IMG/VR virus record: IMGVR_UViG_3300045971_000577
Span: 305,146 to 369,145 of that record
Direction: 5' to 3' (one strand)
DNA length: 64,000 nucleotides
Shown here: positions 1,030 to 64,000 of the stretch, piece by piece
How the letters are laid out: the number at the start of each line of letters is the position of its first letter
How positions within the stretch are numbered: the first letter of the stretch is position 1
Notes under the pieces: model-generated
What the model saw: the letters and a program-made list of their open reading frames with translations, nothing else
What the model was told of the DNA's origin: nothing
The model's database searches: none
Translations under genes and position numbers: made by a program

Positions 1030-1030
1030 G

Positions 1031-2288: not shown

Positions 2289-2310
2289 ATATGTCCTTTA
2301 AGAGTCTGTA

Positions 2311-2430: not shown

Positions 2431-2466
2431 TCTATTACACTTTCCGTAATATCAATCCAATGCAGA

Positions 2467-3639
2467 TTAATAAAACTTCAATGTCGAGCTGTCAATACCA
2501 ACCTTCGACAAATAGTCAGCTGCGTTACCGAAGCTGTTTGCTGTGTTAGTAAGTTCTAGGTAGCCGTAACGTGTCATGAACGATACAACTGGTTCGAACG
2601 TTTGTGGATCCATAACTGGACCGACGCTCATCAATGGAATGTATGGGCAGTAGTAAGCTGCGGCGTCAGTTTCTGTAGGACCCTTGTAACCCATAAGGAT
2701 TGGGTCGCCATCGCTAGCGTACTGGTTGACATACACGCGCATTGTGCTGTTCAATGTACCAACAAACTTTGTGTTTGTAGGTGCTTCGAATGTACCTTCT
2801 GTGGTACGAGCAAACGACGATGTTGTTGCAGACTGAAGAATTGTCAACGCTGTTGGCGAAACAACTGCCCAGTTAGCAGCACCACGACGTGTGCGTGCAG
2901 CAATCAAGTTGGCCTGCTGGTTGATCATAACTGCTAGCGCAGCCATTTCATCACCAACGTATGTAGCTGTACCAGATACAGCGGCTTGGTTGAATGTTGT
3001 TGGAGCGACAGGAACTAGAGCGCCTAGCTTGTAGAGCATTTCCTGGTCGATTTCAACTGTGATTTCTTGTGCAAGAGCTTGCATGATTTCAGCTTCGATG
3101 TCGATACCGTGAATAGCATTAGCATCTTGAGCGGCTTCGAATGTCCAACGAGCAGATAGTCTGCGTGTCTTAGCTTCGACAGTCTCTTTCAAGATCTGAA
3201 TGCTCATCTTGTTACCTGGTACACCTTCCATACGTGCTGTAGAAGCAGCAGCAGGGTCAGCTTGAACTTCGTTACCCGAATATGCCTTAGCAATTTCGAA
3301 TGGACCAAGAGCTTCTGTACCAGCTGTTACACCAGCGGCTGTGTTTGCATAGCGAACACGAAGAGTGTGGATCTGACCGACGGGGCCTGTCATTGGCTGA
3401 ACGCCCATGATTTCGTTAGCGATAACGGTAGGCATAACACGACGGATTAGGGGTAGCATCACCTTGTTTAGTACAGCGATGTTACCAGCTTGTGTAGCAC
3501 CTGCGGTTGCCGATTCAGCCAAGTAACGACGAGTGTTTTCAAACACGACGTCCATGGACTGTCTACGGGTACCCGAAAGGCCTTCTAGAAGGGCTTCTTT
3601 TGTTGCGCCCCAGTTTGATTCAAATAGCTTTGTTGCCAT
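2467..3639 (-). CDS. gp23: Major capsid protein (T4 gp23 family)
   Basis: LIRRVMPTVIANEIMGVQPMTGPVGQI, VEAKTRRLSARWTFEAAQD, YYCPYIPL, FMTRYG. Confidence 0.97.
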   Translation of the reverse strand: MATKLFESNWGATKEALLEGLSGTRRQSMDVVFENTRRYLAESATAGATQAGNIAVLNKVMLPLIRRVMPTVIANEIMGVQPMTGPVGQIHTLRVRYANTAAGVTAGTEALGPFEIAKAYSGNEVQADPAAASTARMEGVPGNKMSIQILKETVEAKTRRLSARWTFEAAQDANAIHGIDIEAEIMQALAQEITVEIDQEMLYKLGALVPVAPTTFNQAAVSGTATYVGDEMAALAVMINQQANLIAARTRRGAANWAVVSPTALTILQSATTSSFARTTEGTFEAPTNTKFVGTLNSTMRVYVNQYASDGDPILMGYKGPTETDAAAYYCPYIPLMSVGPVMDPQTFEPVVSFMTRYGYLELTNTANSFGNAADYLSKVGIDSSTLKFY

Positions 3640-53662: not shown

Positions 53663-53931
53663 TATGTGTGTATTCCCCAAATCAGCCGGAACATTAGCAT
53701 ATCCTCTTCAGTAGCAAAGTATATACGCATAGAATAATATATATTAAACTTTCCGATCAGTATAGGAAATACTTCTGGTGCTGTAGACCAATAATGTTTA
53801 GATTTGGTTTCGCAAAGCCGTTGCATCATTTTCAATACCAGATCTCGAATATCAGATCCGGAAAGTTTTTTCACAATGATGAGATTGTGCAGATAATCAA
53901 CCTGATGTAGATAGGTGGTCTGGTCGTGCAT
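53662..53931 (-). CDS. Array paralogue 1
   Basis: Likely start MHDQT; FATEEDMLMFRLIWG. Confidence 0.75.
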   Translation of the reverse strand: MHDQTTYLHQVDYLHNLIIVKKLSGSDIRDLVLKMMQRLCETKSKHYWSTAPEVFPILIGKFNIYYSMRIYFATEEDMLMFRLIWGIHT

Positions 53932-54103
53932 TATGCGACTATAATACAAGATCAACTTGGTCAGATCAAGAGGGACCTATACAGTTTTGGTAAAAAATGG
54001 TTGCGCGGCTTGCCACCCTCGTCAAAATGTTACATCTCTTACAAATCTGTGTGCTGACTGGGATTTTTACGAACTGTTACAACTGTTGCATTTGTTACGT
54101 TTC

Positions 54104-54331
54104 TTACACCTTTACTGGTGCCTCGCCGTTGACTATCCATTGATCAACTGACGCCACGAGGCTAAGCGTTCGCCCACTGTCCCACTGCACAGCCACGTGC
54201 CACTGTCCCAGCACATGCCGTACGTCCAGCACCGTACCCGTTGACCATGGTGGTACGGGGTGGGGGTCGGGACCCATGCCAAGCAGGGTAATGCGTTGAC
54301 CTACGCGGGCGGGTGGAGTAAGCTGCATCAT
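54104..54331 (-). CDS. DUF4314-like protein
   Basis: GQRITLLGMGPDPHPVPPWSTGTV..V.WDSGRTLSL...D; ATG 6 nt after the -10 element. Confidence 0.7.
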   Translation of the reverse strand: MMQLTPPARVGQRITLLGMGPDPHPVPPWSTGTVLDVRHVLGQWHVAVQWDSGRTLSLVASVDQWIVNGEAPVKV

Positions 54332-54337
54332 GTGTAT

Positions 54338-54380
54338 ACTATAGCGCACACCACCCTACACGTCAATCACTGTTACATAT
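54338..54380 (-). promoter_or_regulatory. Early cassette promoter with upstream box
   Basis: ATATGTAACA-4-TTGACG-17-TATAGT. Confidence 0.75.
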
Positions 54381-54390
54381 GCTTACACCT

Positions 54391-54426
54391 GTAAGCACCT
54401 GTAAGCAAACGTAAGCAGATGTAACA
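54391..54426 (+). repeat. Four 10-bp-phased GTAA(G/C) repeats
   Basis: GTAAG at 54391, 54401, 54411; GTAAC at 54421. Confidence 0.8.
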
Positions 54427-54493
54427 ACGGTAAAGGTCTCGCACTGTGCCCGTCATACCTTGGTGACGCTATGAGGCAACGGTGAGCAAACGA

Positions 54494-54514
54494 AAGGGGC
54501 GTTCGCCGCCCCTT
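54494..54514 (-). terminator. Terminator hairpin
   Basis: AAGGGGCG-TTCGC-CGCCCCTT downstream of 54534. Confidence 0.7.
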
Positions 54515-54533
54515 GTCTGTACCCGCGCTGGTC

Positions 54534-54737
54534 TTACTTGATGCTGACGAGGACACCGTCCTTCAGCGTGCCCGTGGCGTACCACTTATGGGGTTGCGGG
54601 TAGTGCGGGCCTTCCAGGGACACCTCGCCGTCTTTGGGGCAGGGGAACGGTCCCGGGCTGTGGCAACGGACTTGCTTGCCATCAGCAATGGCACGCTTCA
54701 CTTCGGCCTTGCTCTTGAAGTTGGTATCGGTGTACAT
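54534..54737 (-). CDS. Small hypothetical protein
   Basis: Own promoter and AAGGA RBS. Confidence 0.75.
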   Translation of the reverse strand: MYTDTNFKSKAEVKRAIADGKQVRCHSPGPFPCPKDGEVSLEGPHYPQPHKWYATGTLKDGVLVSIK

Positions 54738-54744
54738 GGTGCAT

Positions 54745-54806
54745 TCCTTGTTGCGATGTATGTATTATGCAGCGTGGTGCGCTTGCTGTCAACCACTGTT
54801 ACATCT
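54745..54806 (-). promoter_or_regulatory. Early cassette promoter with box and leader
   Basis: AGATGTAACA-4-TTGACA-17-CATAAT-ACATACATCGCAACAAGGA. Confidence 0.85.
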
Positions 54807-54808
54807 TA

Positions 54809-54928
54809 TTACAGCTCGTGCCCGCCACACCAGACCAACCACCAAGTGCGGAAGTCCTCACACCCTGTCAGCGCTCCCTCCCGCATGTACGAGGCGTAGA
54901 AAGCTGGGCTTGCTTGGTGGATACTCAC
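54809..54928 (-). CDS. Small hypothetical protein (39 aa, GTG start)
   Basis: GTGA-coupled to the upstream gene; ends right at the next box. Confidence 0.5.
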   Translation of the reverse strand: MSIHQASPAFYASYMREGALTGCEDFRTWWLVWCGGHEL

Positions 54929-55140
54929 ATATCCCCGGGCAGGTAGTTGCAGCGGTTGCGGTAGCACTTGCCGTCCCACTCCGCCACGCTGATCGTATAG
55001 CCGATGCTGAGGAAGAACATCGCTTCGCCCATTGCCGCTGCTTGCCCAATCTCCATGCTGCGGTCTGGGTAGGCTGCGTCGTAGCTGACCGGGTCCCGGA
55101 TGCTGATGCGGGGCTGGGTCACATCGTATGTGGTGCGCAT
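54925..55140 (-). CDS. Small hypothetical protein
   Basis: Start MRTTYDV after AAGGAG. Confidence 0.7.
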   Translation of the reverse strand: MRTTYDVTQPRISIRDPVSYDAAYPDRSMEIGQAAAMGEAMFFLSIGYTISVAEWDGKCYRNRCNYLPGDM

Positions 55141-55147
55141 GATTGCT

Positions 55148-55211
55148 GCTCCTTGTTGCGATGTTGTTACTATAATGCAACGAACAGGGGTTGTCAACCC
55201 CTGTTACATCT
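55148..55211 (-). promoter_or_regulatory. Early cassette promoter with box and leader
   Basis: AGATGTAACA-4-TTGACA-17-TATAGT-AACAACATCGCAACAAGGAG. Confidence 0.85.
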
Positions 55212-55225
55212 GTCTCGCGTGCTGC

Positions 55226-55513
55226 TCAGCAGACCTTGGCGAAGTAATGCACGACCACAGTGTGCATCGTCTGGGTCTGCCCGTCGGCGTACACGGTGCC
55301 GGGTTGCACTTCACATTCCGCGTCGGGTGAGGCGCACAAATTACGTTCCAGCCGTTGCTTGATTCCCACGGCGCGGTAGGCGTTGTGCTGCTGCGGTGAC
55401 ATGCAACGGAACACAGTCGCGCCGCTTTCCTTCGTGACCAGCACGGCCACATCCGAGGCCTTGATTCCTTCCATCTTGTACGCGAGCAGGATGATTTGGA
55501 TGACGACTTGCAT
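55226..55513 (-). CDS. Small hypothetical protein
   Basis: AAAGGA RBS, own promoter. Confidence 0.7.
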   Translation of the reverse strand: MQVVIQIILLAYKMEGIKASDVAVLVTKESGATVFRCMSPQQHNAYRAVGIKQRLERNLCASPDAECEVQPGTVYADGQTQTMHTVVVHYFAKVC

Positions 55514-55552
55514 GTTGTTTCCTTTGTGTTGCTGCGTTGTTGCAGTGTTTAA

Positions 55553-55595
55553 ACTATAACGCAGGTTGAATGCTTATGCAAGCACTGTTACATTT
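55553..55595 (-). promoter_or_regulatory. Early cassette promoter with box
   Basis: AAATGTAACA-4-TTGCAT-17-TATAGT. Confidence 0.75.
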
Positions 55596-55619
55596 ACTTA
55601 CAAGCTGCCGGCCGGCATA

Positions 55620-56126
55620 AGCCTCGAGGTTAAGGTTAAAGACCTTAGCCCAGTGTCTAGCCCTAGTAGAGGCTTTTGCAACTTAGACTAATTTTTAGAT
55701 CGCAGCTTTAAGTCTGCTGCCGGCGAGCCTCGTGTATGCTCAAGGTCAACCGCGGTTACGTTATGAGGCTTATCGCAATAAGTCTTAGATTCTTGTTGAC
55801 CTGCCCGGACTTTTGCGATAAAATGACATTTATTGCTTGCGCAGAATGACCTACGGCTCTACACGAAAAATAGCCTCACAATGCAAAAGGCAACTACAAG
55901 TGGTCTATAGATCAACGTGTGAGGCTTTGCTGCAAAGCCCTAGATTCTTAGATCAGTTGTCTGTAAGCCTCACAGACGCGTTTTAAGATCACAAGCGGTC
56001 GCTTGCTCAGCTCTTGAGGCTTTGCGGGCAGAGCTCTGTCTGTGTGGTCAAGTGCGAGCAAACCCCTGTAAGCCTCACTTGTGGCCCAGTTACTGGGCAA
56101 AGACCTAATCTTTAGTTAGCGAGGCA
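55620..56126. repeat. Array of five AGCCTC...GAGGC(T/A) inverted pairs
   Basis: AGCCTC at 55620, 55726, 55872, 55966, 56071; GAGGC at 55669, 55765, 55921, 56016, 56121. Confidence 0.8.
55796..55824 (+). promoter_or_regulatory. Sigma70 promoter facing non-coding DNA
   Basis: TTGACC-17-TAAAAT. Confidence 0.55.
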
Positions 56127-56164
56127 GCGGTGGTCAAACGACTGGGCACCCGTAAGTGCCCAGT
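55831..56164 (+). ncRNA. Candidate ~330-nt structured ncRNA
   Basis: Promoter at 55796, no ORF of 60 aa or more, three repeated stems, closing hairpin ACTGGGCAC-6-GTGCCCAGT (56141-56164). Confidence 0.35.
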
Positions 56165-56205
56165 GCTCAAAAGAACCGCTTGTAGGGGCGTTTAGCCCCC
56201 TTGCC

Positions 56206-56433
56206 CTACCAGGGCTCGCACATATTGGGAAACGTGTTCGTCTCCTCCAGCACCGTCAACGCCCGCGCCGCTGCTGCGTAGGCCTCGTCTTCCGTGTCCC
56301 AGATCGGCGCGCTGGCGCAGTTGTTGGCGAGGTATTCCTGGCCCGGGTCGCCAGCAAATGTGGAGAAGCACGAACGCCACTTGCCGTTGGCTGCCTGTTC
56401 GGGCGCGCTGACTTCGGTGCGGATCTTGATCAT
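56206..56433 (-). CDS. Small hypothetical protein
   Basis: AAGGAG RBS, own promoter. Confidence 0.75.
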   Translation of the reverse strand: MIKIRTEVSAPEQAANGKWRSCFSTFAGDPGQEYLANNCASAPIWDTEDEAYAAAARALTVLEETNTFPNMCEPW

Positions 56434-56438
56434 GCTGT

Positions 56439-56502
56439 GCTCCTTGTTGCGATGTTGTTACTATAACGGAGTTGGGAGGCTCCGTCAAGCACTGTTACAT
56501 CT
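56439..56502 (-). promoter_or_regulatory. Early cassette promoter with box and leader
   Basis: AGATGTAACA-4-TTGACG-17-TATAGT-AACAACATCGCAACAAGGAG. Confidence 0.85.
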
Positions 56503-56701
56503 ATTTCTTCACAGCGTCAGCAACGGCTTCGTAGGAGTCAGTCGCCACCTCGATGGTCTTGTCCGTCGCCACCGAGATCGCCTTCGAGGCTTTCTTCACC
56601 TCGGACTGGTTGTCCTTGTAGAGGATGATGCCTTGGCCCGCCAGCAGCAGGGCAACGATGCTGGCGATGGCGCCCACAAACACATTCTTGAACGTCTTCA
56701 T
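56501..56701 (-). CDS. Small single-TM protein
   Basis: N-terminal hydrophobic helix; its stop overlaps the next box. Confidence 0.75.
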   Translation of the reverse strand: MKTFKNVFVGAIASIVALLLAGQGIILYKDNQSEVKKASKAISVATDKTIEVATDSYEAVADAVKK

Positions 56702-56728
56702 CTGTATTCCTTAAGTTGCAATGTCACA

Positions 56729-56771
56729 ATAATAGCTGCATACGGGCCGTCTGTCAACCCTTATTACATCT
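56729..56771 (-). promoter_or_regulatory. Early cassette promoter with box
   Basis: AGATGTAATA-4-TTGACA-17-TATTAT. Confidence 0.8.
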
Positions 56772-56943
56772 GCTTACACCACTTCTCTTCCTCGCACAAC
56801 AGCTCGTCGTCAGTGGCGTCGTCATTGAGGTAACGCTCACCGTCTTCAAAATCGCCTTCCTCACCGTCAGCTTCGTACTGTTCACGCATTGCGTGGATGA
56901 TGCGCTCGGCCTTCAAGGCGCGCTCTTGCCTGGTGAGTGCCAT
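56764..56943 (-). CDS. Small acidic hypothetical protein
   Basis: Start MALTRQE after AAGGAG. Confidence 0.75.
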   Translation of the reverse strand: MALTRQERALKAERIIHAMREQYEADGEEGDFEDGERYLNDDATDDELLCEEEKWCKQM

Positions 56944-56949
56944 TGTTGG

Positions 56950-57013
56950 CTCCTTGCTGTTGATGTATGTATTATGCAGGCTGGAACAGGGGCTGTCAAC
57001 CCCTGTTACATCT
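56950..57013 (-). promoter_or_regulatory. Early cassette promoter with box and leader
   Basis: AGATGTAACA-4-TTGACA-17-CATAAT-ACATACATCAACAGCAAGGAG. Confidence 0.85.
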
Positions 57014-57116
57014 TTCCAGTGACACGCTTCCACAGCTGGTGGAAGAAGCGCCTCACGCGGTTCTGCATCAGCTCGGCTGCGATTTCGAGGCGAAACTTCA
57101 TGTAGTCAGTGTTCAT
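57006..57116 (-). CDS. Small hypothetical protein (36 aa)
   Basis: MNTDYMKF starts 1 nt after the upstream stop; its own stop lies inside the box. Confidence 0.5.
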   Translation of the reverse strand: MNTDYMKFRLEIAAELMQNRVRRFFHQLWKRVTGKM

Positions 57117-57117
57117 G

Positions 57118-57315
57118 TTAGGCCTGCTGGATGTGTTGCGCGACGATGCGGGCGGCGCAGTCCTCGCCCTGGGCCATGTCGATCGCGCCCTGCTCCACGA
57201 GGTTGTAGCACAAGTCGCCGCCGTCGTAGAAGCCGTACTGCTCCTCCACAATCTTGTCGACCTTCTCCGAGAAGTCGTGCATGACTGCGTGCTGTGCCAT
57301 TGTGGTGCGGGGCAT
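57118..57315 (-). CDS. Small hypothetical protein
   Basis: AAGGAG RBS, own promoter. Confidence 0.75.
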   Translation of the reverse strand: MPRTTMAQHAVMHDFSEKVDKIVEEQYGFYDGGDLCYNLVEQGAIDMAQGEDCAARIVAQHIQQA

Positions 57316-57321
57316 GCTGTG

Positions 57322-57370
57322 CTCCTTGTTGCGATGTATGTATTATGCGCGTAGAAGCAGCAGTTGTCAA
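57322..57370 (-). promoter_or_regulatory. Early cassette promoter with leader (no box)
   Basis: TTGACA-17-CATAAT-ACATACATCGCAACAAGGAG. Confidence 0.85.
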
Positions 57371-57612
57371 CCGTAAATCTTCAAGGCCTCATCCATGACG
57401 ATCGTCTCCACACCGCCATCCAGAGGCATCAGGTGGTGCTGCTGGAACAGGACTTCCACGCCGGCGGCCAGCAGCACAGCGGGCATGAGCTTGTACAGAG
57501 GCTGCTGGCCGTTATCCATTTCGCACATCAGGATGTGAGCAACGGTGCGGCACGACCCCACTGGGCAACGGGCGTCACCCAGAATCATTACACGTTGTCC
57601 TATTGCGAGCAT
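57367..57612 (-). CDS. Small hypothetical protein
   Basis: Start MLAIGQR after AAGGAG. Confidence 0.7.
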   Translation of the reverse strand: MLAIGQRVMILGDARCPVGSCRTVAHILMCEMDNGQQPLYKLMPAVLLAAGVEVLFQQHHLMPLDGGVETIVMDEALKIYG

Positions 57613-57617
57613 GTTTG

Positions 57618-57680
57618 CTCCTTGCTGCGATGTGTGTACTTTATTATATAGTGGCTCCAGTGTCAAGCACTGTTACATCT
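57618..57680 (-). promoter_or_regulatory. Early cassette promoter with box and leader
   Basis: AGATGTAACA-4-TTGACA-17-TAAAGT-ACACACATCGCAGCAAGGAG. Confidence 0.8.
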
Positions 57681-57693
57681 GCTTACGCCTGCA

Positions 57694-57779
57694 CTGCCTC
57701 ATTCATCGGTCCAAGACCATTGAGCCACTACATGCGAGGCTGCTGCTGCCTCATTCATCGGTCCAAGACCATTGAGCCA
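57694..57779 (+). repeat. 34-bp direct repeat, two copies, 18-bp spacer
   Basis: CTGCCTCATTCATCGGTCCAAGACCATTGAGCCA at 57694 and 57746. Confidence 0.9.
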
Positions 57780-57807
57780 ACGCGGTGAGACCGCGTGACG
57801 ATCCGCC

Positions 57808-57949
57808 AGATGTAACAAGGTGTAACAACGGTTGCATTGATGCGCAGTGGTGTTATAGTTATGACATGGAGACAGCAGTGCAACAGCAAGCAAACAAGCA
57901 AAACTGTTACACTTTAGTTGTTGTCCAAAGCGCCCCAAAGAGTTATAGT
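57808..57949 (+). promoter_or_regulatory. Two tandem rightward promoters, the first with a double box
   Basis: AGATGTAACA-AGGTGTAACA-4-TTGCAT-16-TATAGT; TTGTCC-17-TATAGT. Confidence 0.7.
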
Positions 57950-57994
57950 TTAGTCACTGCAACACACGCTGCAAAGCAGCAAGAAAGGTAGACC

Positions 57995-58534
57995 ATGGAC
58001 AAGGGAATCCGCCCGTACGTGAACGCCAAGTTCATCGAGCTCAACGCCCAGCGCAAGGCGGGCACGCTGACCAACACGCAGTTCCGCAAGAACGTGATGT
58101 GCGACGCGATGGAAGCGTTTGGCATCACCCTGGCGAGCGCCGCGACGCACTACAACCATGCGTTCCAGGCGGTGAAGGCGGCGACACCGACGGAAGTGGA
58201 AGGCCTGGGCCGCCCCGACGACAAGAAGGGCGGGCGCAAGCGCAAGGAAGTCGCAGCCCCGACGGTGGCCAGCGTCATCCCCGTGGACCCGGCCGCGCTG
58301 CTGCAAGGGCTGCTGAATGCCCCGGCTGCGGTGCAGGTGGAGACGGCGCAAGCCGTGGAAACGCCCGCAGCCGACCCCAACGACGCCGGCGAGACGGGCG
58401 AAGTGCAGACGGTGTTCAACGTGTGCAAGAAGTCCGACGGCAGCGTGGTGGCAGAAGGCGTGAGCCTGGAAGAAGCCAAGGCGCTGGTGGAAGCGGCGGC
58501 CAAGGCCAAGAAGGCCAAGCTGTACTGGGTCTAA
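57995..58534 (+). CDS. Hypothetical protein, MDKGIR paralogue A (possible HTH-like DNA binder)
   Basis: FRKNVM...FGITLASAATHYN..GLGRP; paralogue at 61642-62070. Confidence 0.8.
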   Translation: MDKGIRPYVNAKFIELNAQRKAGTLTNTQFRKNVMCDAMEAFGITLASAATHYNHAFQAVKAATPTEVEGLGRPDDKKGGRKRKEVAAPTVASVIPVDPAALLQGLLNAPAAVQVETAQAVETPAADPNDAGETGEVQTVFNVCKKSDGSVVAEGVSLEEAKALVEAAAKAKKAKLYWV

Positions 58535-58550
58535 GCACCCAAGGTGGGAA

Positions 58551-58570
58551 GGGGGCGCAAGCCCCCTATT
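58551..58570 (+). terminator. Terminator hairpin
   Basis: GGGGGC-GCAA-GCCCCC-TATT. Confidence 0.65.
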
Positions 58571-58613
58571 CGCGCGACCAAACCCAGGTCAGAATGCAAG
58601 AGAGGAATCCAAA

Positions 58614-58808
58614 ATGATCAGTGTGATTCTGGTTGATGGAACTACCCGCATGCACATGCCGAGCAGCCGGTGGTCATTGGACGTGCAGGCCTCGTTGGCT
58701 CAGAAGGGCCACCAGCTGCAAGACCTCGGACCTGCTCCGGAGAACGACCCGCGCGATGAGGCCGAGAAGGCACGCGTCATGGAGCTTCTCGACTCCACAG
58801 GGCTGTAG
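58614..58808 (+). CDS. Small hypothetical protein
   Basis: GAGGA RBS. Confidence 0.6.
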   Translation: MISVILVDGTTRMHMPSSRWSLDVQASLAQKGHQLQDLGPAPENDPRDEAEKARVMELLDSTGL

Positions 58809-58815
58809 CAAGATC

Positions 58816-58920
58816 AGCCTCGGAACACGTCGTGAGATCGCTGATCCGACCTTCCGAGGCTACCCTGCGACATGCCTCGGGCGCGCTGTCGAGGCCCGTT
58901 GATCCTACCGCCCGAGGCAT
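58816..58920. repeat. Two GCCTC...GAGGC stem elements
   Basis: AGCCTCGGAA/TTCCGAGGCT (10 bp) and ATGCCTCGGGCG/CGCCCGAGGCAT (12 bp). Confidence 0.85.
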
Positions 58921-58961
58921 GTAACAAGATGTAACGGGGCAAGATGTAACTGGATGTAACA
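58920..58961 (+). repeat. Four TGTAAC boxes with no promoter
   Basis: TGTAAC at 58920, 58930, 58945, 58955. Confidence 0.85.
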
Positions 58962-59133
58962 ATCCAGTTCCGAGATTGAAACCCGTGCAGGCTTTCTACA
59001 CAGGAAACCTATTCAAGAGAAAAGGCCTATTAGGCCTAATCTCGTTTCCGAATCACACTACCCGGGATGCTTGCAGCTAGCGTTTAGCTATGCATTAGCC
59101 ATTTTCTGGCTAATACATTCGGCTACTTCGTGC

Positions 59134-59382
59134 TTACAGCACAAAGCCGTTGACGCACGGGGACGGGGCAAGCTCGGGGTCGCTAAACATGTCCGCCAGC
59201 ACCATGTCCATCTGGCAGTCATCCGTCTCGGGATCGTCAGCTGCCAGAACAGCATCGCCAAGGGCAGCGGCAACGCGCTTGCGTTGCCGCTCGTTGATCA
59301 CGATCGTGTACGTCCCGGGGTCGGGCATGCTGTGCTCGATGGGCATCTCGTAGGGCTTGAGCGTTGCGGGCGTGATGGGCAT
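59134..59382 (-). CDS. Small hypothetical protein
   Basis: AGGA RBS; promoter TTGCAT-17-TATACT at 59408-59436. Confidence 0.7.
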   Translation of the reverse strand: MPITPATLKPYEMPIEHSMPDPGTYTIVINERQRKRVAAALGDAVLAADDPETDDCQMDMVLADMFSDPELAPSPCVNGFVL

Positions 59383-59566
59383 GCTGTGTCCTAGTTGCTA
59401 TGCTTACAGTATAATGCAGAGCAGGAAGCAATGCAACCTGCTGTTTGATCTCAAGCTGCAAAGGCCTCTAGGCGTTTAGGCTCATAGGCCAAGATCCTGT
59501 GCGAGAACTTGTCGTAGGATTTGGACCTGTATTTCCAAATCTGGTCACGAATTTTAAATCGGAAAG

Positions 59567-59812
59567 TTAGGCAGTGTCTTTTGACCGCATGCACTCGCAC
59601 TCGTGTTGCTCAAGCTGAGTAAGCGTATCCGGCTTTGCTTCGCGTGCATTCGCTGGGTCGTTAGCCCACTTGCGGTCTTGCTCTACAAAATGCTTCTCGC
59701 CGTACACACAAAGCCCGACCGCCAGCAGGGCGAGGAGTGCCCCGCCCATGTGTGCAGTTGTTAGACCGTACAGGGCAATGAAGCCAAACAGGAGTGCCAA
59801 GCTGCGCATCAT
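59567..59812 (-). CDS. Small membrane protein
   Basis: Start MMRSLALL, ATGA-coupled; hydrophobic hairpin. Confidence 0.65.
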   Translation of the reverse strand: MMRSLALLFGFIALYGLTTAHMGGALLALLAVGLCVYGEKHFVEQDRKWANDPANAREAKPDTLTQLEQHECECMRSKDTA

Positions 59813-60051
59813 GACTTCCTGAACACCACGATGTTGGGCGCGACCTGCTCGATGAAGTACCAGGCGCCAAACAAGAACGCCAGGATGTTGATCACAGGGC
59901 AGAGAGTTACTGTGAGTCCAATGAGCAGGTTTGACAGCGTCAAGGTCTTCTCGCTCTCCAGCGTGGCATGCTTCATCTCGTAATAGGTGCAGAAGCCGAG
60001 CATGCCACCAGTCAGCAGCACGCACGCCAGGTAGAGCAAAAAGAAGCTCAT
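59809..60051 (-). CDS. Two-TM membrane protein
   Basis: Start MSFFLLY, ATGA-coupled. Confidence 0.7.
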   Translation of the reverse strand: MSFFLLYLACVLLTGGMLGFCTYYEMKHATLESEKTLTLSNLLIGLTVTLCPVINILAFLFGAWYFIEQVAPNIVVFRKS

Positions 60052-60326
60052 GCCATCAGCCCCTCGTAGATGTGCTTGTTGTTGTTGATCAGCGCCAGCA
60101 TCTCGCAAATTTGCTTGAACACACGCACGGCCTCCTCGTCGAACTCCTTGTACAAGAAGTCAACGTCGGTGATCTGCGCCCAAGGTACGTCGACATCGTA
60201 CCGGTTCCAATTGGGCCTGTGCAAGTCGTCAAGCATCACATTCACCCCGCGATGGTGGATGTCCATGACGATTACGCGAGTGTCGTCACTCAGCGTCACG
60301 TTCTCAGTGCGGGTGATTGTGTTCAT
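60048..60326 (-). CDS. Hypothetical protein (probably leaderless)
   Basis: TTGACA-17-TACAAT (60333-60361), then 6 nt and ATG. Confidence 0.75.
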   Translation of the reverse strand: MNTITRTENVTLSDDTRVIVMDIHHRGVNVMLDDLHRPNWNRYDVDVPWAQITDVDFLYKEFDEEAVRVFKQICEMLALINNNKHIYEGLMA

Positions 60327-60338
60327 GTTTGTATTGTA

Positions 60339-60464
60339 TTAGTCCTGCTGCGGTTTGTCAACAGGCACTTCGGTTTGTTTGGGCTGTTCCTGACCTTCCA
60401 TTTGTTCCAGGAAGTCGTCAAGGTCATTGTCGGGAATGCTGCCGTGTTCTTGTTGTTTGGTCAT
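60339..60464 (-). CDS. 41-aa acidic peptide (not in the ORF track)
   Basis: MTKQQEHGSIPDNDLDDFLEQME..; AGGAG RBS; promoter TTGACT-17-TATAAT at 60485-60513. Confidence 0.6.
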   Translation of the reverse strand: MTKQQEHGSIPDNDLDDFLEQMEGQEQPKQTEVPVDKPQQD

Positions 60465-60509
60465 TTCCTTCTCCTGCTGTTAGTATTATACTTAGCAGAA
60501 TGGAAATAG

Positions 60510-60908
60510 TCAACGGCGGGCTATCTGATCCTGCGGCCACTTCGCCCTTACCTGGTAGCGGCGTAGCTCTGCAGGAGTGCTGAACTGTTGGTGTGCATTG
60601 TAGAACCAATACTGCTGAGCTTCACGCTCGTGCAGGATCACAATCGGCTCATACCGGAACTCGGGGAACTGGGTTGCCGTAACATCGACTACATGATCAG
60701 CAGTGATTACGAACACATGGGCGCCCACATCGTCTTCGGACATGTGCATCTCTGCCTCGATCCCTGCTACCTTGAGTCGCTTGTGCAACTCCGAGGAAGC
60801 GATTGCACAGAACCCGCAGAGCGTGTGCTTCGAGTACAGCGGGTCCTGCGCTTCGGCCCACTCACGCACCTCTTGCGCGATGTTGCGAATGCGTTGCAGC
60901 GTGCTCAT
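60510..60908 (-). CDS. Putative papain/transglutaminase-like Cys-His-Asp enzyme
   Basis: Start MSTLQR (ATGA-coupled); GFCAIAS, AHVFV, VVDVTATQF. Confidence 0.6.
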   Translation of the reverse strand: MSTLQRIRNIAQEVREWAEAQDPLYSKHTLCGFCAIASSELHKRLKVAGIEAEMHMSEDDVGAHVFVITADHVVDVTATQFPEFRYEPIVILHEREAQQYWFYNAHQQFSTPAELRRYQVRAKWPQDQIARR

Positions 60909-61132
60909 CCGAAGCAGATGCCCTTCTTGACCATCGTGTCCGGCGACAGCGCGGAGCACACGATCTTGTGCTGGGTGGTATTGTAGAGCAGGTAGTCCTT
61001 CATGCAACCTGCAGCACGGTACAGCAGCACCATGCGCGATTCAGCGATGTCGACGCTCTCACCGCGGTGGATGAGTTTGTCCTTCTCCATGCTGTCGTCT
61101 GCATCGGTTTCGTAGACTTCGTACATAGCCAA
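60905..61132 (-). CDS. Small hypothetical protein
   Basis: AAGGAG leader; likely start at the second Met. Confidence 0.7.
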   Translation of the reverse strand: MAMYEVYETDADDSMEKDKLIHRGESVDIAESRMVLLYRAAGCMKDYLLYNTTQHKIVCSALSPDTMVKKGICFG

Positions 61133-61181
61133 CTCCTTGCTGCGATGTATGTATTATGCAGGGACTAGCCCTGCATGTCTA
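61133..61181 (-). promoter_or_regulatory. Early cassette promoter with leader
   Basis: TAGACA-17-CATAAT-ACATACATCGCAGCAAGGAG. Confidence 0.8.
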
Positions 61182-61187
61182 CCACTT

Positions 61188-61469
61188 TTAGGCGGCCGGC
61201 CCCACGCCGCGGATGTAGTAGCTCAAGTACGTGGCCCGCGTGCTGAAGCCCTTTGCGGTCAGTTCCTTGTTGATTTCTTCCACCACAGGGCGGATGTGCT
61301 GGGCGCTGCCGACATCGAACGCCACGTAGCGGACGTTGCAACCGCGGCGCTCACGCGGGGCCAGGCCCACCGGCAAGTCGGTGTAGCTCTTCATGTACTT
61401 GATACGTGCGTTGTCCAACGCCTTGCGCACCACTGCGCGGAACTCCAGGGTAGTTGCAGGATAGGGCAT
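61188..61469 (-). CDS. Small basic hypothetical protein
   Basis: Start MPYPATT after AGGA. Confidence 0.7.
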   Translation of the reverse strand: MPYPATTLEFRAVVRKALDNARIKYMKSYTDLPVGLAPRERRGCNVRYVAFDVGSAQHIRPVVEEINKELTAKGFSTRATYLSYYIRGVGPAA

Positions 61470-61475
61470 TGTGTG

Positions 61476-61540
61476 TCCTGTATGTTGCGATGTATGTATT
61501 ATGCGCTGATAGGACACACAGGTCAACCTCTGTTACATCT
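61476..61540 (-). promoter_or_regulatory. Early cassette promoter with box and leader
   Basis: AGATGTAACA-4-TTGACC-17-CATAAT-ACATACATCGCAAC. Confidence 0.85.
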
Positions 61541-61602
61541 CTGGCCTCACAGCATGTTTTGCGATCGATCAAGATGCATTGCGAGGCATCTTAGGCCAAA
61601 CG

Positions 61603-61623
61603 AAAAGGGGCCGTAGCCCCTTT
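61603..61623 (-). terminator. Terminator
   Basis: AAAAGGGGC-CGTA-GCCCCTTT. Confidence 0.75.
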
Positions 61624-61641
61624 GTGCCCTTGCTTGTTGCG

Positions 61642-62070
61642 TTAGGCTGCCGTGCCTTCCAGCACCACGGGCGTCACCGCCAGTTGCAGCAGCTCGCAAT
61701 CCGTCACATCGGACATCGTGGCTGGCGTGCCTTCCAGCAGCAGGGCAGCCGTTTCAGCCGGGTCCAGCGCGACGATCGGGATGCCAGCAGCGGTCTCGGT
61801 CTTCTTCTTGCGCCCGCCGTTGTTCTTGCCTTCCGGGCGGCCCAGGCCGCTGACCAGTTCCGGCGTCGCGGCCTTCACCAGTTGGAGCGCGTCGTTGTAG
61901 TGCGTCGCCGCGGATGCCAGCGTGCAGCCGAACTGTTCCATCAGCGTCGCCATGACGTGCTTGCGGAACGTGGTGTTGCCCTTGTCGCCAGTGAACGCCT
62001 GGCCCTTGCGGCGCAGTTCGTTTTGCTCGACGAACAGGTTGCGAGCGAAGCTGCGAATTCCCTTATCCAT
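61642..62070 (-). CDS. Hypothetical protein, MDKGIR paralogue B
   Basis: FRKHVM...FGCTLASAATHYN..GLGRP. Confidence 0.8.
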   Translation of the reverse strand: MDKGIRSFARNLFVEQNELRRKGQAFTGDKGNTTFRKHVMATLMEQFGCTLASAATHYNDALQLVKAATPELVSGLGRPEGKNNGGRKKKTETAAGIPIVALDPAETAALLLEGTPATMSDVTDCELLQLAVTPVVLEGTAA

Positions 62071-62114
62071 TTGTGACTCCTTCTTGCTACTGTGTAGCGT
62101 GTTGCGATGTAGTT

Positions 62115-62157
62115 ACTATAGCAGCGGTGGGCCTAGTGGTCTACCACTGTTACATCT
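62115..62157 (-). promoter_or_regulatory. Early cassette promoter with box
   Basis: AGATGTAACA-4-TAGACC-17-TATAGT. Confidence 0.8.
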
Positions 62158-62158
62158 T

Positions 62159-62437
62159 TTAGGCCAGCAGCACCACCGTGAGTTGCACGCGGAACGTGAT
62201 GCCCAGGTGGTTGAACAACTCCTCGAGGATGAAATCTGCAAGGTCGACGTCACAACGCATGAGGCTGTCGACGTACTGATCGAAACCCGGGATGTCGTCC
62301 TTCATCAGCGGGTCCCGCATGCAGTCGAGGCTGATGAGCACCTTCTGCTTGCCTTCCGGGCTGAAGCTGTTGCTGTCGTCCTGTTCGAAACGGCGACGCA
62401 GGTTGCTGATGCTGTGAATGACAGTGTCGACTGACAT
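62159..62437 (-). CDS. Small hypothetical protein
   Basis: Own promoter TAGACA-17-CATAAT at 62466-62494. Confidence 0.7.
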   Translation of the reverse strand: MSVDTVIHSISNLRRRFEQDDSNSFSPEGKQKVLISLDCMRDPLMKDDIPGFDQYVDSLMRCDVDLADFILEELFNHLGITFRVQLTVVLLA

Positions 62438-62504
62438 GGCGTTGCTTTGTTGCTGCGATGTATATATTATGCAGGGCTGGTCCCTGCATGTCTACCACTT
62501 TATG

Positions 62505-63368
62505 TCAGCCCATGAAGCTCAACGGAATGCCAACCTTGGCGCAGTTTGCCTTGAAGGTCCCACGTGCCAGCTGGCGATCGTAGCCGTTGGCGGCAATCAT
62601 GGCAGCGATGATCGTTTCGTAACCGTGGCCAGCGCGGTAACCCTGCAGCATGATGCGACGGCTGATGCTCGCCTTGCTTTCACCTGCAGCGGGCAGCACG
62701 TTGGGCGCAGGCAGGATGCAGCGCGGAGCAGGGGGCAGCAAGCGCGGAGCAACAGCGGGCACATACACACGGGCTTGCACAGGCAGCGCAGGGGCCACGG
62801 TCATCGTGGGCTGCTTCACGATGGGTGCCGCAAGCGTCTGCCCACGCGCACCAACGATGCTGTACGCACAGGCTGCGTGGATGCTGCCCTTGTTGTGGCG
62901 CAGGCGGATGGTAGTGCCCAGCTGGATCTTGCGGTGGTGACGGTCACCAACGCGCACCGTGTGCCCCTTGTCGCTGGTGTATTCGTACGTGATGCCCTTG
63001 CCGTACACCACTTCCTCTTGGTGACGCGTGCGACCGCTGCCGCCCAGGGCGAGGCAGATGCGCTCCCAGCCCGCGTCGTGGTTCTTGCCCAAGTCCGGCT
63101 GGATGAAGCACAGGATGTGCGCGTATTCGTGCGGCACAGTGCTGTTGAGCACGTGATCGAAAGCTTCACGCGACAGCATGTCGGTGTTGAACTTCACGAT
63201 GTAGTTGGACATCACCGGGTCGCGGTACTTCAGCCCGTGTGCCTTGCCAGCCGCCTTGCCCTTCAGGTCGAAGCTGACGCGCACGCGGGACATGTCCACG
63301 TTGTAGAGCTGATACGCACGGGCAACGACTTCCTTGCACTTGGCAAGGATTTGTTCACGGGGCGTCAT
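62505..63368 (-). CDS. SprT-like zinc metalloprotease with C-terminal extension
   Basis: KAAGKA, TVPHEYAHIL, HDAGW. Confidence 0.85.
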   Translation of the reverse strand: MTPREQILAKCKEVVARAYQLYNVDMSRVRVSFDLKGKAAGKAHGLKYRDPVMSNYIVKFNTDMLSREAFDHVLNSTVPHEYAHILCFIQPDLGKNHDAGWERICLALGGSGRTRHQEEVVYGKGITYEYTSDKGHTVRVGDRHHRKIQLGTTIRLRHNKGSIHAACAYSIVGARGQTLAAPIVKQPTMTVAPALPVQARVYVPAVAPRLLPPAPRCILPAPNVLPAAGESKASISRRIMLQGYRAGHGYETIIAAMIAANGYDRQLARGTFKANCAKVGIPLSFMG

Positions 63369-63377
63369 TTTTGCTTG

Positions 63378-63443
63378 CTCCTGTTTGCTGCGATATATGT
63401 ATTATGCAGTCAGGAACCGGTCTGGTCGACCACTGTTACATCT
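63378..63443 (-). promoter_or_regulatory. Early cassette promoter with box and leader
   Basis: AGATGTAACA-4-TCGACC-17-CATAAT-ACATATATCGCAGCAAACAGGAG. Confidence 0.8.
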
Positions 63444-63446
63444 GCC

Positions 63447-63554
63447 TCACACTGTGTCGTCAATGCTCGTGAGCAGGAACAAGAGGCCAAAGACCCAGTG
63501 CCCTGTGTAGAAACAGAACACCGCCATCAGCAGAGGAGTGGTTTGAAACTTCAC
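63447..63554 (-). CDS. 35-aa membrane micro-protein (GTG start)
   Basis: MKFQTTPLLMAVFCFYTGHWVFGLLFLLTSIDDTV. Confidence 0.55.
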   Translation of the reverse strand: MKFQTTPLLMAVFCFYTGHWVFGLLFLLTSIDDTV

Positions 63555-63564
63555 GTGCCTTGCC

Positions 63565-63666
63565 TTAGATGCTTGCGGCAATGACAAAGCACACGAGGGC
63601 GATCACCCAGTGTCCAGTGACAAGGGCGATGACGCCAGCGAAAACCAATGCTACGGATGTGCTCAT
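63565..63666 (-). CDS. 33-aa membrane micro-protein
   Basis: MSTSVALVFAGVIALVTGHWVIALVCFVIAASI; GAGG RBS. Confidence 0.6.
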   Translation of the reverse strand: MSTSVALVFAGVIALVTGHWVIALVCFVIAASI

Positions 63667-63668
63667 GC

Positions 63669-63923
63669 TTACCTCGGGCTGCTAACACGGAAGTGGAAAT
63701 CACGCGGGGCACGACCTTCGAGACGTGCCAGCTGACGTTCGATGGCCTGAACATCAGCGATCTGCGATTGGATGCGGACCATGGCGCCGGGCCACGAATC
63801 ACCGAAGCGGGCCACCTCGCCGTTGTGCTCCGAGATGACTTCGTAGAGACCCTCCAGGGCTTCCCAGTCAGTCGCTTCGTTGGCGTAACGGATGAACTCG
63901 TCACGCGTCATCGGCTTCGACAT
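63669..63923 (-). CDS. Small hypothetical protein
   Basis: Start MSKPMTR after AAGGAG. Confidence 0.75.
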   Translation of the reverse strand: MSKPMTRDEFIRYANEATDWEALEGLYEVISEHNGEVARFGDSWPGAMVRIQSQIADVQAIERQLARLEGRAPRDFHFRVSSPR

Positions 63924-63930
63924 GTTGTTG

Positions 63931-63980
63931 GCTCCTTGCTGCGATGTCTGTATTATGCACGCAAGGAGCCACCCTGTCAA
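63931..63980 (-). promoter_or_regulatory. Early cassette promoter with leader
   Basis: TTGACA-17-CATAAT-ACAGACATCGCAGCAAGGAG. Confidence 0.85.
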
Positions 63981-64000
63981 CCGCTAGTTGAACGCCTGCC

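What the first reader, a model, noticed from the sequence alone, without database searches (positions are those of the whole stretch)
54436..61588. Dispersed family of GCCTC-N(32-45)-GAGGC inverted elements in non-coding gaps
Seen: about 11 units: 54436-54477 (degenerate), five at 55620-56126 with ~50-bp alternation, two at 57695-57791, two at 58816-58920, and one at 61544-61588. The ends are constant and the interiors unrelated. Stem extensions differ yet stay complementary (AGCCTCACA/TGTGAGGCT, AGCCTCGGAA/TTCCGAGGCT, ATGCCTCGGGCG/CGCCCGAGGCAT), which points to selection on pairing. Several sit next to TGTAAC boxes. Inference: a structured ssDNA or RNA element with constant ends and a variable core, such as recombination sites for the cassettes, processed small RNAs, or injection/packaging signals.
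Basis: partly seen in the sequence, partly recalled or inferred. Interest (0 to 1): 0.78.

Follow-up and report, generated by a model that had tools for sequence, protein, structure and literature searches.

The report
Ruler-spaced inverted DNA motif, phage early arc
A 13.6-kb early-gene region of an uncultured 369-kb jumbo phage holds about 1.5 copies per kb of a ~43-bp element made of two short inverted half-sites held almost exactly 32 bp apart, both between and inside genes; it looks more like a protein-recognition or recombination site on DNA than a folded RNA, and no described family matches it.

Summary
The units are real and far above chance. GCCTC-N25-50-GAGGC occurs 13 times against 0.65 expected. 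The refined form YCTCR-N30-34-YGAGR occurs 20 times in the arc against about 0.8 at control spacings.

- **Spacing.** It is ruler-sharp (31-33 nt), with minor classes at 10-11 and 41-44 nt.
- **Location.** About half the units lie inside small early ORFs, often at orthologous positions in relatives.
- **Interiors.** They are enriched for GATC and fall into subfamilies.
- **Stem extensions.** The "complementary stem extensions" come mostly from both ends matching one degenerate half-site consensus. Pairing beyond that is weak, and interiors fold no better than random DNA.

The family is shared by a large uncultured clade related to PA5oct. Within this genome it is confined to a GC-rich arc of promoter-per-gene early cassettes.

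A 95-bp two-unit block is cleanly inverted between two phages that are 97% identical in the 200 nt on one side, with breakpoints at the outer half-sites.

No tyrosine or serine recombinase, no Y1 HUH transposase and no Rfam match was found.

Best reading (about 0.4): a double-stranded DNA site for an unidentified dimeric protein that marks the early arc. Its ends are also prone to recombination. The RNA-hairpin and mobile-repeat readings remain possible.

The parts
53843..53884 (.). Unit TCTCG-N32-TGAGA at the left edge of the GC-rich arc
   Evidence: GC jump at about window 53,900
54120..54162 (.). Unit GCCTCG-N31-CGAGGC with central TTGATCAA, next to TGTTACA boxes. With those boxes it forms the left member of the inverted boundary composite of the arc.
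54436..54477 (.). Degenerate unit (TCTCG-N30-TGAGG) between an intrinsic terminator (54490-54515) and TGTAAC/GTAAGC boxes (54372-54432)
55621..55673 (.). Array unit 1, long class (53 nt), 3' half AGAGG
55727..55769 (.). Array unit 2, short class (N31)
55796..55824 (+). Sigma-70-type promoter (TTGACC-17-TAAAAT) inside the array, pointing towards units 3-5 and the terminator at about 56140-56200. Conserved in L149, L151 and (twice) in G007.
55873..55925 (.). Array unit 3, long class (N41)
55967..56020 (.). Array unit 4, long class (N42)
56072..56125 (.). Array unit 5, long class (N42)
56548..56589 (.). Unit (N32) inside predicted small ORF 56501-56701(-)
56790..56830 (.). Unit (N31) inside ORF 56764-56943(-). 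The orthologues in L134 and L149 carry a unit at the same place.
57162..57202 (.). Unit (N31) inside ORF 57118-57315(-). Conserved in the L149 orthologue, absent in L142.
57696..57740 (.). First of a tandem near-duplicate pair in the gap between divergent promoters, upstream of both
57747..57791 (.). Second of the pair, with a degenerate 3' half (TGAGA). The orthologous pair is inverted as a block between L153 and L151.
57995..58534 (+). 179-aa conserved gene flanked on both sides by unit pairs. It has an N-terminal helical domain, an invariant GLGRP..KKGGRK basic motif and a small C-terminal domain. It is only a speculative candidate binder.
58724..58761 (.). Unit-like pair (N28) inside ORF 58614-58808(+)
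58817..58860 (.). Long-stem unit (10 bp, N32) with a nested N10 mini-palindrome, in the convergent gap
58874..58918 (.). Long-stem unit (12-14 bp, N33) with a nested N10 mini-palindrome. It abuts four TGTAAC boxes (58919-58965).
59695..59735 (.). Unit (TCTCG-N31-CGAGG) inside ORF 59567-59812(-)
60755..60796 (.). Unit (N32) inside ORF 60510-60908(-). Orthologues carry it with N35 or N41, or lack it.
61544..61587 (.). Solitary unit (N32) between the terminator at about 61600-61625 and the TGTAACA box and promoter of the next gene
62221..62264 (.). Unit (N34) inside ORF 62159-62437(-). Conserved in orthologues in L149 and L151 (N34) and L134 (N31).

Best explanation
**What is shown**
- The feature is a dyad-ended DNA element about 43 bp long. 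It has two inverted half-sites, (G)YCTCR and YGAGR(C), held 31-33 bp apart, with minor classes at 10-11 and 41-44 bp.
- It occurs about 1.5 times per kb across the 13.6-kb GC-rich early-gene arc of a 369-kb jumbo phage related to PA5oct, and in the equivalent arcs of many uncultured relatives.

**What is inferred**
- It acts on double-stranded DNA as the recognition site of a dimeric or two-domain DNA-binding protein, from the phage or the host.
- That protein reads only the two ends and requires a fixed distance between them, which would leave the interior free to drift, flip and duplicate.
- Because the units cluster at the ends of early transcription units, beside the TGTAAC promoter boxes, at both edges of the arc and in a promoter-containing array, the bound protein would mark or organise the early arc. 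Possible roles are boundary or insulator, shut-off of early genes, or a replication- or partition-type nucleoprotein complex. Which of these applies is not known.

**What is shown once**
- The inverted ends are breakpoints of a small inversion.
For: - **Spacing.** It is ruler-like: N=31-33 accounts for 144 pairs in 152 kb against a background of 1-2 per spacing. The reverse arrangement is flat, and direct arrangements were flat in the smaller set.
- **Spacing classes.** The classes differ by about 21-22 and about 9-10 bp, close to two turns and one turn of the helix. One orthologous in-ORF site switches between N32, N35 and N41.
- **Symmetric consensus.** Left and right ends show the same degenerate consensus, and per-unit pairing hardly exceeds what that consensus gives.
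- **Interiors.** They are not more foldable than random DNA.
- **No strand bias.** None is seen in mismatches or in the GATC-type interior motifs.
- **Placement.** Units occur in ORFs, in gaps and in a gap upstream of both divergent promoters.
- **Positional conservation.** In-ORF units and gap clusters keep their positions across relatives with 45-80% protein identity while interiors diverge.
- **Regional restriction.** 20 of the 28 genome copies lie in 3.7% of the genome.
- **Array conservation.** In the array the spacers and promoter are better conserved than the unit interiors.
Against: - No binding protein is identified. The flanked 179-aa protein has a basic GRP-type motif but no fold or family match.
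- Centre-to-centre distances of about 15.5, 37 and 47 bp are half-integral numbers of helical turns. That is awkward for a simple dimer on straight DNA.
- The expected N of about 21 class is missing.
- Gap units do show an excess of long stems (11 against 4.7).
- The arrays have conserved promoters and terminators, so an RNA role for part of the family is not excluded.
- ORF calls rest on simple ORF, RBS and GC3 heuristics.
Confidence: 0.4

Rival explanations
1. Structured RNA (or ssDNA) hairpin modules. The inverted ends close a stem around a variable loop. The modules would act in early transcripts or in array ncRNAs, for example as processing, stability or protein-binding hairpins.
For: - Individual gap units fold better than shuffles: z from -1.7 to -4.4 for most.
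- Gap units show an excess of stems of 8 bp or more.
- The arrays carry conserved sigma-70 promoters, a conserved leader motif and a terminator in five phages.
- The cultured relative PA5oct makes two abundant ncRNAs from its early terminal-repeat region (PMC7318152).
- Minute inversions are typical of hairpin loops.
- In G007 one unit's 3' half-site supplies the Shine-Dalgarno sequence of a gene.
Against: - Covariation is weak or absent. For ORF units z=-0.7.
- C.A is as frequent as T.G at the second position.
- Interiors are unstructured, so a 4-6 bp helix would have to close a roughly 32-nt loop.
- Both orientations occur.
- Solitary units lie downstream of intrinsic terminators, and one pair lies upstream of both divergent promoters.
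- There is no Rfam match.
- PA5oct itself lacks the motif.
- No RNA data were obtainable.
Confidence: 0.2
2. A family of miniature palindromic repeats whose ends are recombination or transposition sites, in the manner of REP/BIME, RPE or attC. They would spread, duplicate and flip through an unidentified enzyme or through replication template-switching, with little function for the phage.
For: - The 95-bp two-unit block is inverted between L153 and L151. Identity is 97% over the 200 nt to the right of the block, 86% for the block as reverse complement and 65% forward.
- G007 array units 6 and 7 are inverted duplicates.
- Near-identical tandem pairs occur in the window, L149 and L155.
- Interior subfamilies exist.
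- Copies occur inside ORFs, as with Rickettsia palindromic elements (my own knowledge).
- Unit length is constant.
Against: - No tyrosine recombinase, serine recombinase or Y1 HUH transposase is encoded in the 369-kb genome.
- No target-site duplication is visible in the flanks.
- Copies are not near-identical.
- Positions are conserved across distant relatives.
- The copies are confined to one arc.
- Most cassette junctions carry no unit.
Confidence: 0.2
3. A by-product of composition, codon usage or paralogous small proteins in a GC-rich region.
For: - Several in-ORF units read Leu(CTC)...Glu(GAG) in acidic small proteins.
- Shuffles of the whole window underestimate expectation in the GC-rich arc.
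Against: - Control spacings in the same arc give 0-3 against 20.
- The peak is present separately in coding DNA (24 against about 2.4) and in non-coding DNA (19 against about 0.1).
- The reverse arrangement shows no peak, and direct arrangements showed none in the smaller set.
Confidence: 0.03

Closest known systems
Region-specific dyad protein-binding sites (operators, iterons, parS/matS-type sites)
   Same: - Inverted half-sites at a fixed distance.
- Many copies confined to one genomic domain.
- Clusters near promoters and around one conserved gene.
- Sites tolerated inside genes.
   Different: - The half-sites are only 5-6 bp and lie about 32 bp apart, far wider than usual operators or parS/matS palindromes.
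- Discrete alternative spacings exist.
- No binding protein is known.
- The comparison rests on anatomy only.
REP/BIME elements of bacteria (mobilised by RAYT transposases)
   Same: - Short palindromic elements.
- Clusters with mixed orientation and conserved spacers.
- Often placed after genes or terminators.
   Different: - Only the ends are conserved.
- There is no GTAG-type head.
- Half the copies lie in ORFs.
- No RAYT or Y1 transposase was found.
- This is a phage early region, not a bacterial chromosome.
Integron attC sites
   Same: - Inverted conserved ends around a variable centre.
- Association with arrays of small genes.
- Evidence of recombination at the ends.
   Different: - The ends are YCTCR/YGAGR, not RYYYAAC/GTTRRRY.
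- Length is fixed at about 43 bp rather than 57-141.
- Pairing selection is weak.
- The cassettes have their own promoters, and most junctions lack a unit.
- No IntI was found.
PeSL promoter-early stem-loop cassettes of T4-type phages (PMC2839356, PMC4122927)
   Same: - The surrounding arc is a hyperplastic region of small ORFs, each with a near-consensus sigma-70 promoter and a conserved 5' UTR.
- Some units sit just upstream of such promoters.
   Different: - The PeSL stem-loop is the upstream gene's terminator with a short loop.
- Here canonical terminators are separate, the loop would be about 32 nt, and units also lie in ORFs.
Injection stop signal region of the phage T5 terminal repeat
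   Same: - An early-gene region, in a terminal repeat in T5 and in PA5oct (PMC7318152).
- It carries a non-coding stretch; the T5 record marks a 1-kb iss there.
   Different: - No sequence or motif similarity was tested or seen.
- The T5 iss is one locus, not a dispersed family.
- The 179-aa protein is unrelated to T5 A2.

Membership tests
Integron attC | Core sites RYYYAAC ... GTTRRRY at the two ends | tested here: not met
   The ends are (G)YCTCR ... YGAGR(C), and no AAC/GTT triplets are conserved
Integron attC | Integron integrase (tyrosine recombinase) encoded with the array | tested here: not met
   PF00589 gives no match in the 369-kb genome, with controls positive
Integron attC | Folded bottom strand: imperfect hairpin maintained by pairing | tested here: inconclusive
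   Partner-shuffle z=2.4 overall and -0.7 in ORFs. There is a small excess of long stems in gaps.
REP/BIME | Whole palindrome conserved among copies, with a GTAG-type head | tested here: not met
   Only 5-8 nt at each end are conserved, and interiors diverge into subfamilies
REP/BIME | Strictly extragenic location | tested here: not met
   53 units lie in predicted ORFs against 44 in gaps. A coding-only spacing peak is present.
REP/BIME | Cognate RAYT (Y1 HUH) transposase | tested here: not met
   PF01797 gives no match in the genome. A host-encoded enzyme cannot be tested.
Structured RNA family (Rfam or new) | Match to a curated covariance model | tested here: not met
   No hit at gathering threshold. 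Only chance-level miRNA/sRNA hits appear at E up to 5.
Structured RNA family (Rfam or new) | Compensatory base changes and G.U tolerance on one strand | tested here: not met
   Second-position pairs are C-G 38, T-A 15, C.A 19, T.G 15, close to independence. G.T is about as frequent as A.C at all flanking positions.
Structured RNA family (Rfam or new) | Transcribed as RNA | not testable with these tools
   No RNA run was listed. The array has a conserved promoter.
CRISPR array | Direct repeats of 25-40 nt separating the variable segments | tested here: not met
   Inter-unit segments are 40-150 nt and are not repeats of each other. Only the inverted 5-nt ends recur.
Invertible DNA switch (Hin/Gin/Fim type) | Segment bounded by inverted repeats and found in both orientations | tested here: met
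   This is met between related phages only: L153 against L151. Orientation polymorphism within one population was not seen in contigs.
Invertible DNA switch (Hin/Gin/Fim type) | Serine or tyrosine invertase gene | tested here: not met
   PF00239 and PF00589 are both absent from the genome
PeSL cassette | Repeated early sigma-70 promoter with conserved flanks between small ORFs | tested here: met
   There are 20 promoter-like sites against 3.4 expected. The conserved UTR motif is confined to the early region. This applies to the surrounding cassettes, not to the units.
PeSL cassette | The stem-loop is the terminator directly upstream of the promoter | tested here: not met
   Separate G+C hairpin and T-run terminators precede the units at 54490-54515, about 56160-56200 and about 61600-61625
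Dyad protein-binding site | Symmetric half-site consensus at fixed spacing, independent of strand and coding status | tested here: met
Dyad protein-binding site | A protein that binds it | not testable with these tools
   Only a speculative candidate exists, the 179-aa protein

The most novel reading that the evidence does not exclude
The units are the sites of a DNA transaction that uses no known recombinase family: a ruler-type recognition of two 5-bp inverted ends about 37 bp apart. That transaction flips, duplicates or replaces short segments throughout the early arc of a large clade of jumbo phages. Alternatively, the units nucleate a domain-specific nucleoprotein structure that sets the early (possibly first-injected) DNA apart from the rest of the genome.
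Probability: 0.12. Interest if true: 0.8.

Novelty: new variant of a known kind. Interest (0 to 1): 0.6.

Why it matters
- Jumbo phages of the PA5oct type carry long early regions full of orphan genes, and how these regions are controlled is largely unknown.
- A motif with this spacing precision, this density, confinement to one arc and conservation inside genes implies a dedicated reader protein or DNA transaction that has not been described.
- The flanked 179-aa protein family has more than 750 metagenomic members and none in cultured phages. The motif itself was seen in the arcs of about ten of those relatives.
It could also yield a new sequence-specific DNA-binding or recombination module.
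- The case also shows that inverted ends with apparently complementary extensions can look like covariation while reflecting a shared half-site consensus.

Tried and rejected
- **N4-like virion RNA polymerase hairpin promoters.** This was my first guess, based on a 3191-aa ORF. The phage is instead a T4-like jumbo myovirus and the large ORF is a fibre or baseplate protein.
- **tRNA or tRNA-like genes.** None in the window; the 47 tRNAs lie elsewhere in the genome.
- **Interiors as antisense or spacer-like matches to the phage's own genome.** Nothing beyond local duplicates and TGTAAC boxes. Interiors against host or other phage genomes were not searched.
- **IHF consensus in the interiors.** 0 observed.
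- **Centred GATC.** The positions are spread.
- **PA5oct as a transcriptomic proxy.** Its genome lacks the motif, its two ncRNAs are not visibly alike, and no cultured phage encodes the 179-aa protein.
- **T5 A2 lead from the protein atlas (score 0.59).** The profile comparison gave probability 0.25%.
- **Fold searches of the 179-aa model.** No match with E at or below 0.001 in PDB and nothing convincing in AFDB. Pfam gave nothing.
- **A loose pattern scan of IMG/VR (AAAGCCTC-N-GAGGCTTA).** It returned mostly chance hits and was discarded.
- **Contigs of two pond runs laid on the region.** This showed only cross-matches of the repeated promoters and no orientation variants.
- **MAFFT with direction adjustment.** It did not give a consistent orientation or interior alignment.
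- **The arc ORFs scanned.** All are orphans in PHROGs, and a few also in Pfam, apart from one SprT-like protein.

Full report
**Context**

The window is the last 64 kb of a single 369,145-bp contig whose ends overlap by 127 nt, so it is a circular assembly. The contig is a jumbo T4-like myovirus:
- Portal, baseplate hub and wedge, and tail-fibre proteins are present.
- The portal is 59% identical to that of Pseudomonas phage PA5oct and about 50% to that of Atu_ph07.
- There are 47 tRNA genes and a tmRNA, none of them in the window.

Overall G+C is 0.45. At window position about 53,900 it jumps to 0.53-0.61 and stays high across the junction to genome position about 3,400. This 13.6-kb arc is packed with small ORFs. 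Each has its own near-consensus sigma-70 promoter (20 promoter-like sites against 3.4 expected), a conserved 5' UTR and an upstream ATGTAACA box. The layout resembles the promoter-early (PeSL) cassettes of T4-type hyperplastic regions (PMC4122927). In PA5oct the comparable early genes lie in a 39-kb terminal repeat that also yields two abundant ncRNAs (PMC7318152). Apart from one SprT-like protein, the arc ORFs scanned have no family match.

Yes.
- GCCTC-N25-50-GAGGC occurs 13 times in the window against 0.65 expected, all at 54120-63487.
- Genome-wide, all but one of the 18 matches to a slightly looser pattern lie in or beside the same arc; the other lies in the wider early region.
- With the refined core, YCTCR-N30-34-YGAGR occurs 28 times in the genome. 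Twenty copies lie in the arc (1.47 per kb), 4 in the other 52 kb of early region and 4 in the remaining 303 kb.
- Nine control spacing blocks within the same arc give 0-3 pairs, so local composition does not explain the enrichment.

**Relatives**

An exact 20-mer from the promoter and UTR, and the 179-aa protein encoded at 57995-58534, pulled in related arcs from IMG/VR, JGI and Logan contigs. All of them carry the units, usually at the same relative places:
- a pair in the divergent-promoter gap upstream of the 179-aa gene;
- two or three units in the convergent gap downstream of it;
- a solitary unit after terminators;
- an array of 5-10 units.

PA5oct itself shows no enrichment. No cultured phage encodes the 179-aa protein, although it has more than 750 metagenomic homologues.

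**Anatomy, corrected**

I pooled 152 kb from 12 loci and counted the distance between YCTCR and YGAGR.

| Spacing N | Count |
|---|---|
| 10 | 16 |
| 31 | 43 |
| 32 | 47 |
| 33 | 54 |
| 41-44 | 28 |
| background | 1-2 per spacing |

The reverse arrangement is flat, and direct arrangements were flat in the smaller set.
- A unit is therefore 43-45 bp. The window's array units 3-5 belong to the class that is about 10 bp longer.
- Sixteen of 142 units carry a third half-site exactly 10-11 nt from one end.
- Both ends show the same degenerate consensus, roughly G-Y-C-T-C-G-S-A.
- Interiors are 3-4 times enriched for GATC and for GATCA/CTGATC, without strand bias. They fall into recognisable subfamilies such as ...GAATCAAGAGCC... 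and ...AGGTTCT..GAGCC....
- The units are not confined to gaps. In G+C-rich loci 53 lie in predicted ORFs and 44 in gaps, and coding-only DNA shows its own spacing peak (24 against about 2.4).
- In the window, in-ORF copies lie at 56548, 56790, 57162, 59695, 60755 and 62221.
- Four of these recur at the orthologous codons in relatives with 47-82% protein identity, with N=31, 34, 35 or 41.

**Is pairing selected?**

Only weakly.
- At the second position of the ends the combinations are C-G 38, T-A 15, C.A 19 and T.G 15, close to independence.
- Shuffling right-hand ends among units lowers the number of complementary flanking positions only slightly: z=2.4 for 72 units, z=-0.7 for ORF units, z=1.4 for gap units.
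- Gap units do have more stems of 8 bp or longer than expected (11 against 4.7).
- Interiors fold no better than random 32-mers from the same loci: mean z is -0.10 against -0.22.
- G.T and A.C mismatches are equally frequent, and no consistent orientation emerged.
- Rfam has nothing.

**Where the units sit**

- Solitary units lie between an intrinsic terminator and the TGTAACA box and promoter of the next gene (54436, 61544).
- The pair at 57696-57791 lies upstream of both divergent promoters, so neither should transcribe it.
- The pair at 58817-58918 closes a convergent gap and abuts four TGTAAC boxes.
- The two edges of the arc carry inverted copies of a composite of two TGTTACA boxes plus a unit.
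- The array (55621-56125) contains a + strand promoter (55796-55824) that is conserved in L149, L151 and twice in G007. In those relatives it is followed by a conserved leader motif, GGGGAAGCTCTGAC.
- In three-way alignment the spacers and promoter are better conserved than the unit interiors.

The array is therefore probably transcribed, but the other locations argue that the common denominator of the family is DNA.

**Rearrangements**

- L153 and L151 are 97% identical over the 200 nt to the right of the divergent-gap pair.
- The 95-bp two-unit block between them is 86% identical only as reverse complement (65% forward).
- This is a clean inversion with breakpoints at the outer half-sites.
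- G007 array units 6 and 7 are inverted duplicates of each other.
- The window, L149 and L155 each have near-identical tandem pairs.
- The genome encodes no tyrosine or serine recombinase and no Y1 HUH transposase.

**Interpretation**

These features together fit a double-stranded DNA site read at its two ends by a dimeric or two-domain protein:
- ruler-like spacing, with classes about one and two helical turns apart;
- a symmetric consensus;
- indifference to strand, coding status and transcription;
- positional conservation with a drifting interior;
- confinement to one arc.

I put this at about 0.4. Its weak points are:
- No binder is identified. The flanked 179-aa protein has an invariant GLGRP..KKGGRK basic motif and a confident helical N-domain, but no fold or family match.
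- The centre-to-centre distances are half-integral numbers of turns.
- An N of about 21 class is missing.

The RNA or ssDNA hairpin reading (0.2) keeps the array promoters, the long-stem gap units and the PA5oct ncRNA precedent in its favour. The palindromic mobile or recombination-element reading (0.2) keeps the inversion, the duplications and the in-ORF copies. Neither could be excluded without RNA data or population-level reads, and none were obtainable.

**Comparison and novelty**

The element fails the defining tests for attC, REP/BIME, CRISPR arrays, PeSL stem-loops and any Rfam family (see the membership table). It behaves most like a domain-restricted set of protein-binding sites, but with an unusually wide fixed spacer and copies embedded in genes. 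I rate it a new variant of a known kind: real, unexplained, and typical of a large uncultured phage clade.

**Limits**

- Gene calls are my own ORF, RBS and GC3 heuristics.
- Several relatives are fragments.
- The helical-phase argument rests on three spacing classes.
- The inversion is documented for one locus pair.

Noticed in passing
window 54372-54432, 57671-57680, 57811-57832, 58919-58965 and upstream of most -35 boxes at 54000-64000: (A)TGTAACA boxes, often preceded by GTAAGCA, sit 3-4 nt upstream of the -35 hexamer of most early promoters, oriented with the promoter. They also occur as inverted pairs in relatives (L003 4855-4905, L135 13985-14045). They are probably sites for an activator or part of the shuffled promoter cassette.
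   Followed up: partly
window about 53,900 to genome position about 3,400 (G000:C1:359000-369018 plus 1-3400); L001 3140-3360: A 13.6-kb arc of G+C 0.53-0.61 lies in a 0.45 genome. It is bounded by inverted copies of a roughly 70-nt composite (two TGTTACA boxes plus one unit; shared 17-mer TGTAACAGTTCGTAAAA). Beyond its right edge lies a roughly 1.1-kb low-G+C non-coding stretch (L001 3040-4200) with its own short repeats.
   Followed up: partly
window 57863-57915; L003 6070-6130 (reverse strand): A conserved 16-17 codon ORF (METAVQQQANKQNCYTL in the window) starts a few nt after the -10 box of the first promoter of the 179-aa gene. It could be a leaderless upstream micro-ORF.
   Followed up: no
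window 63447-63666; L133 15640-15740: Tandem genes encode very small hydrophobic peptides that share a TGHW(V) motif. In G007 the unit between such a gene and the next supplies that gene's Shine-Dalgarno sequence.
   Followed up: no
L149 4875-5453: A 192-aa NUMOD3-type (homing-endonuclease-like) gene is inserted between the orthologues of window 57995-58534 and 58614-58808 in one close relative only.
   Followed up: no
G000:C1:255570-255644 and 261189-261528: ARAGORN calls a tRNA with anticodon CTA (an amber reader, labelled Pyl) and a tmRNA with tag ANDSFYTEALAA among the phage's 47 tRNA genes.
   Followed up: no
L003 5225-5370: Four tandem copies of a roughly 32-nt terminator-like hairpin (GGGGCTTGTGCCCCCTTCTGACCTTAGGTA) follow the 179-aa homologue in the relative G001.
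   Followed up: no
window 32940-42515: A 3191-aa ORF with a CBM_5_12 carbohydrate-binding module sits after the baseplate wedge gene. It is presumably a giant fibre or baseplate protein.
   Followed up: no
window 58960-59130; L003 4100-4260; L149 5830-5990: A conserved non-coding segment in the convergent gap carries an AGGCCT-N3-AGGCCT hairpin and motifs such as TTCCGAATC and GCTAATRCATTCGGCTACTTCGTG. It is a second conserved non-coding element of unknown role.
   Followed up: no
window 57698-57775: Both pond assemblies break at the tandem unit pair, leaving a 78-nt contig. In one run, word depth differs on the two sides (42 against 73). Depth here cannot settle whether part of the arc is a collapsed terminal repeat.
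   Followed up: no
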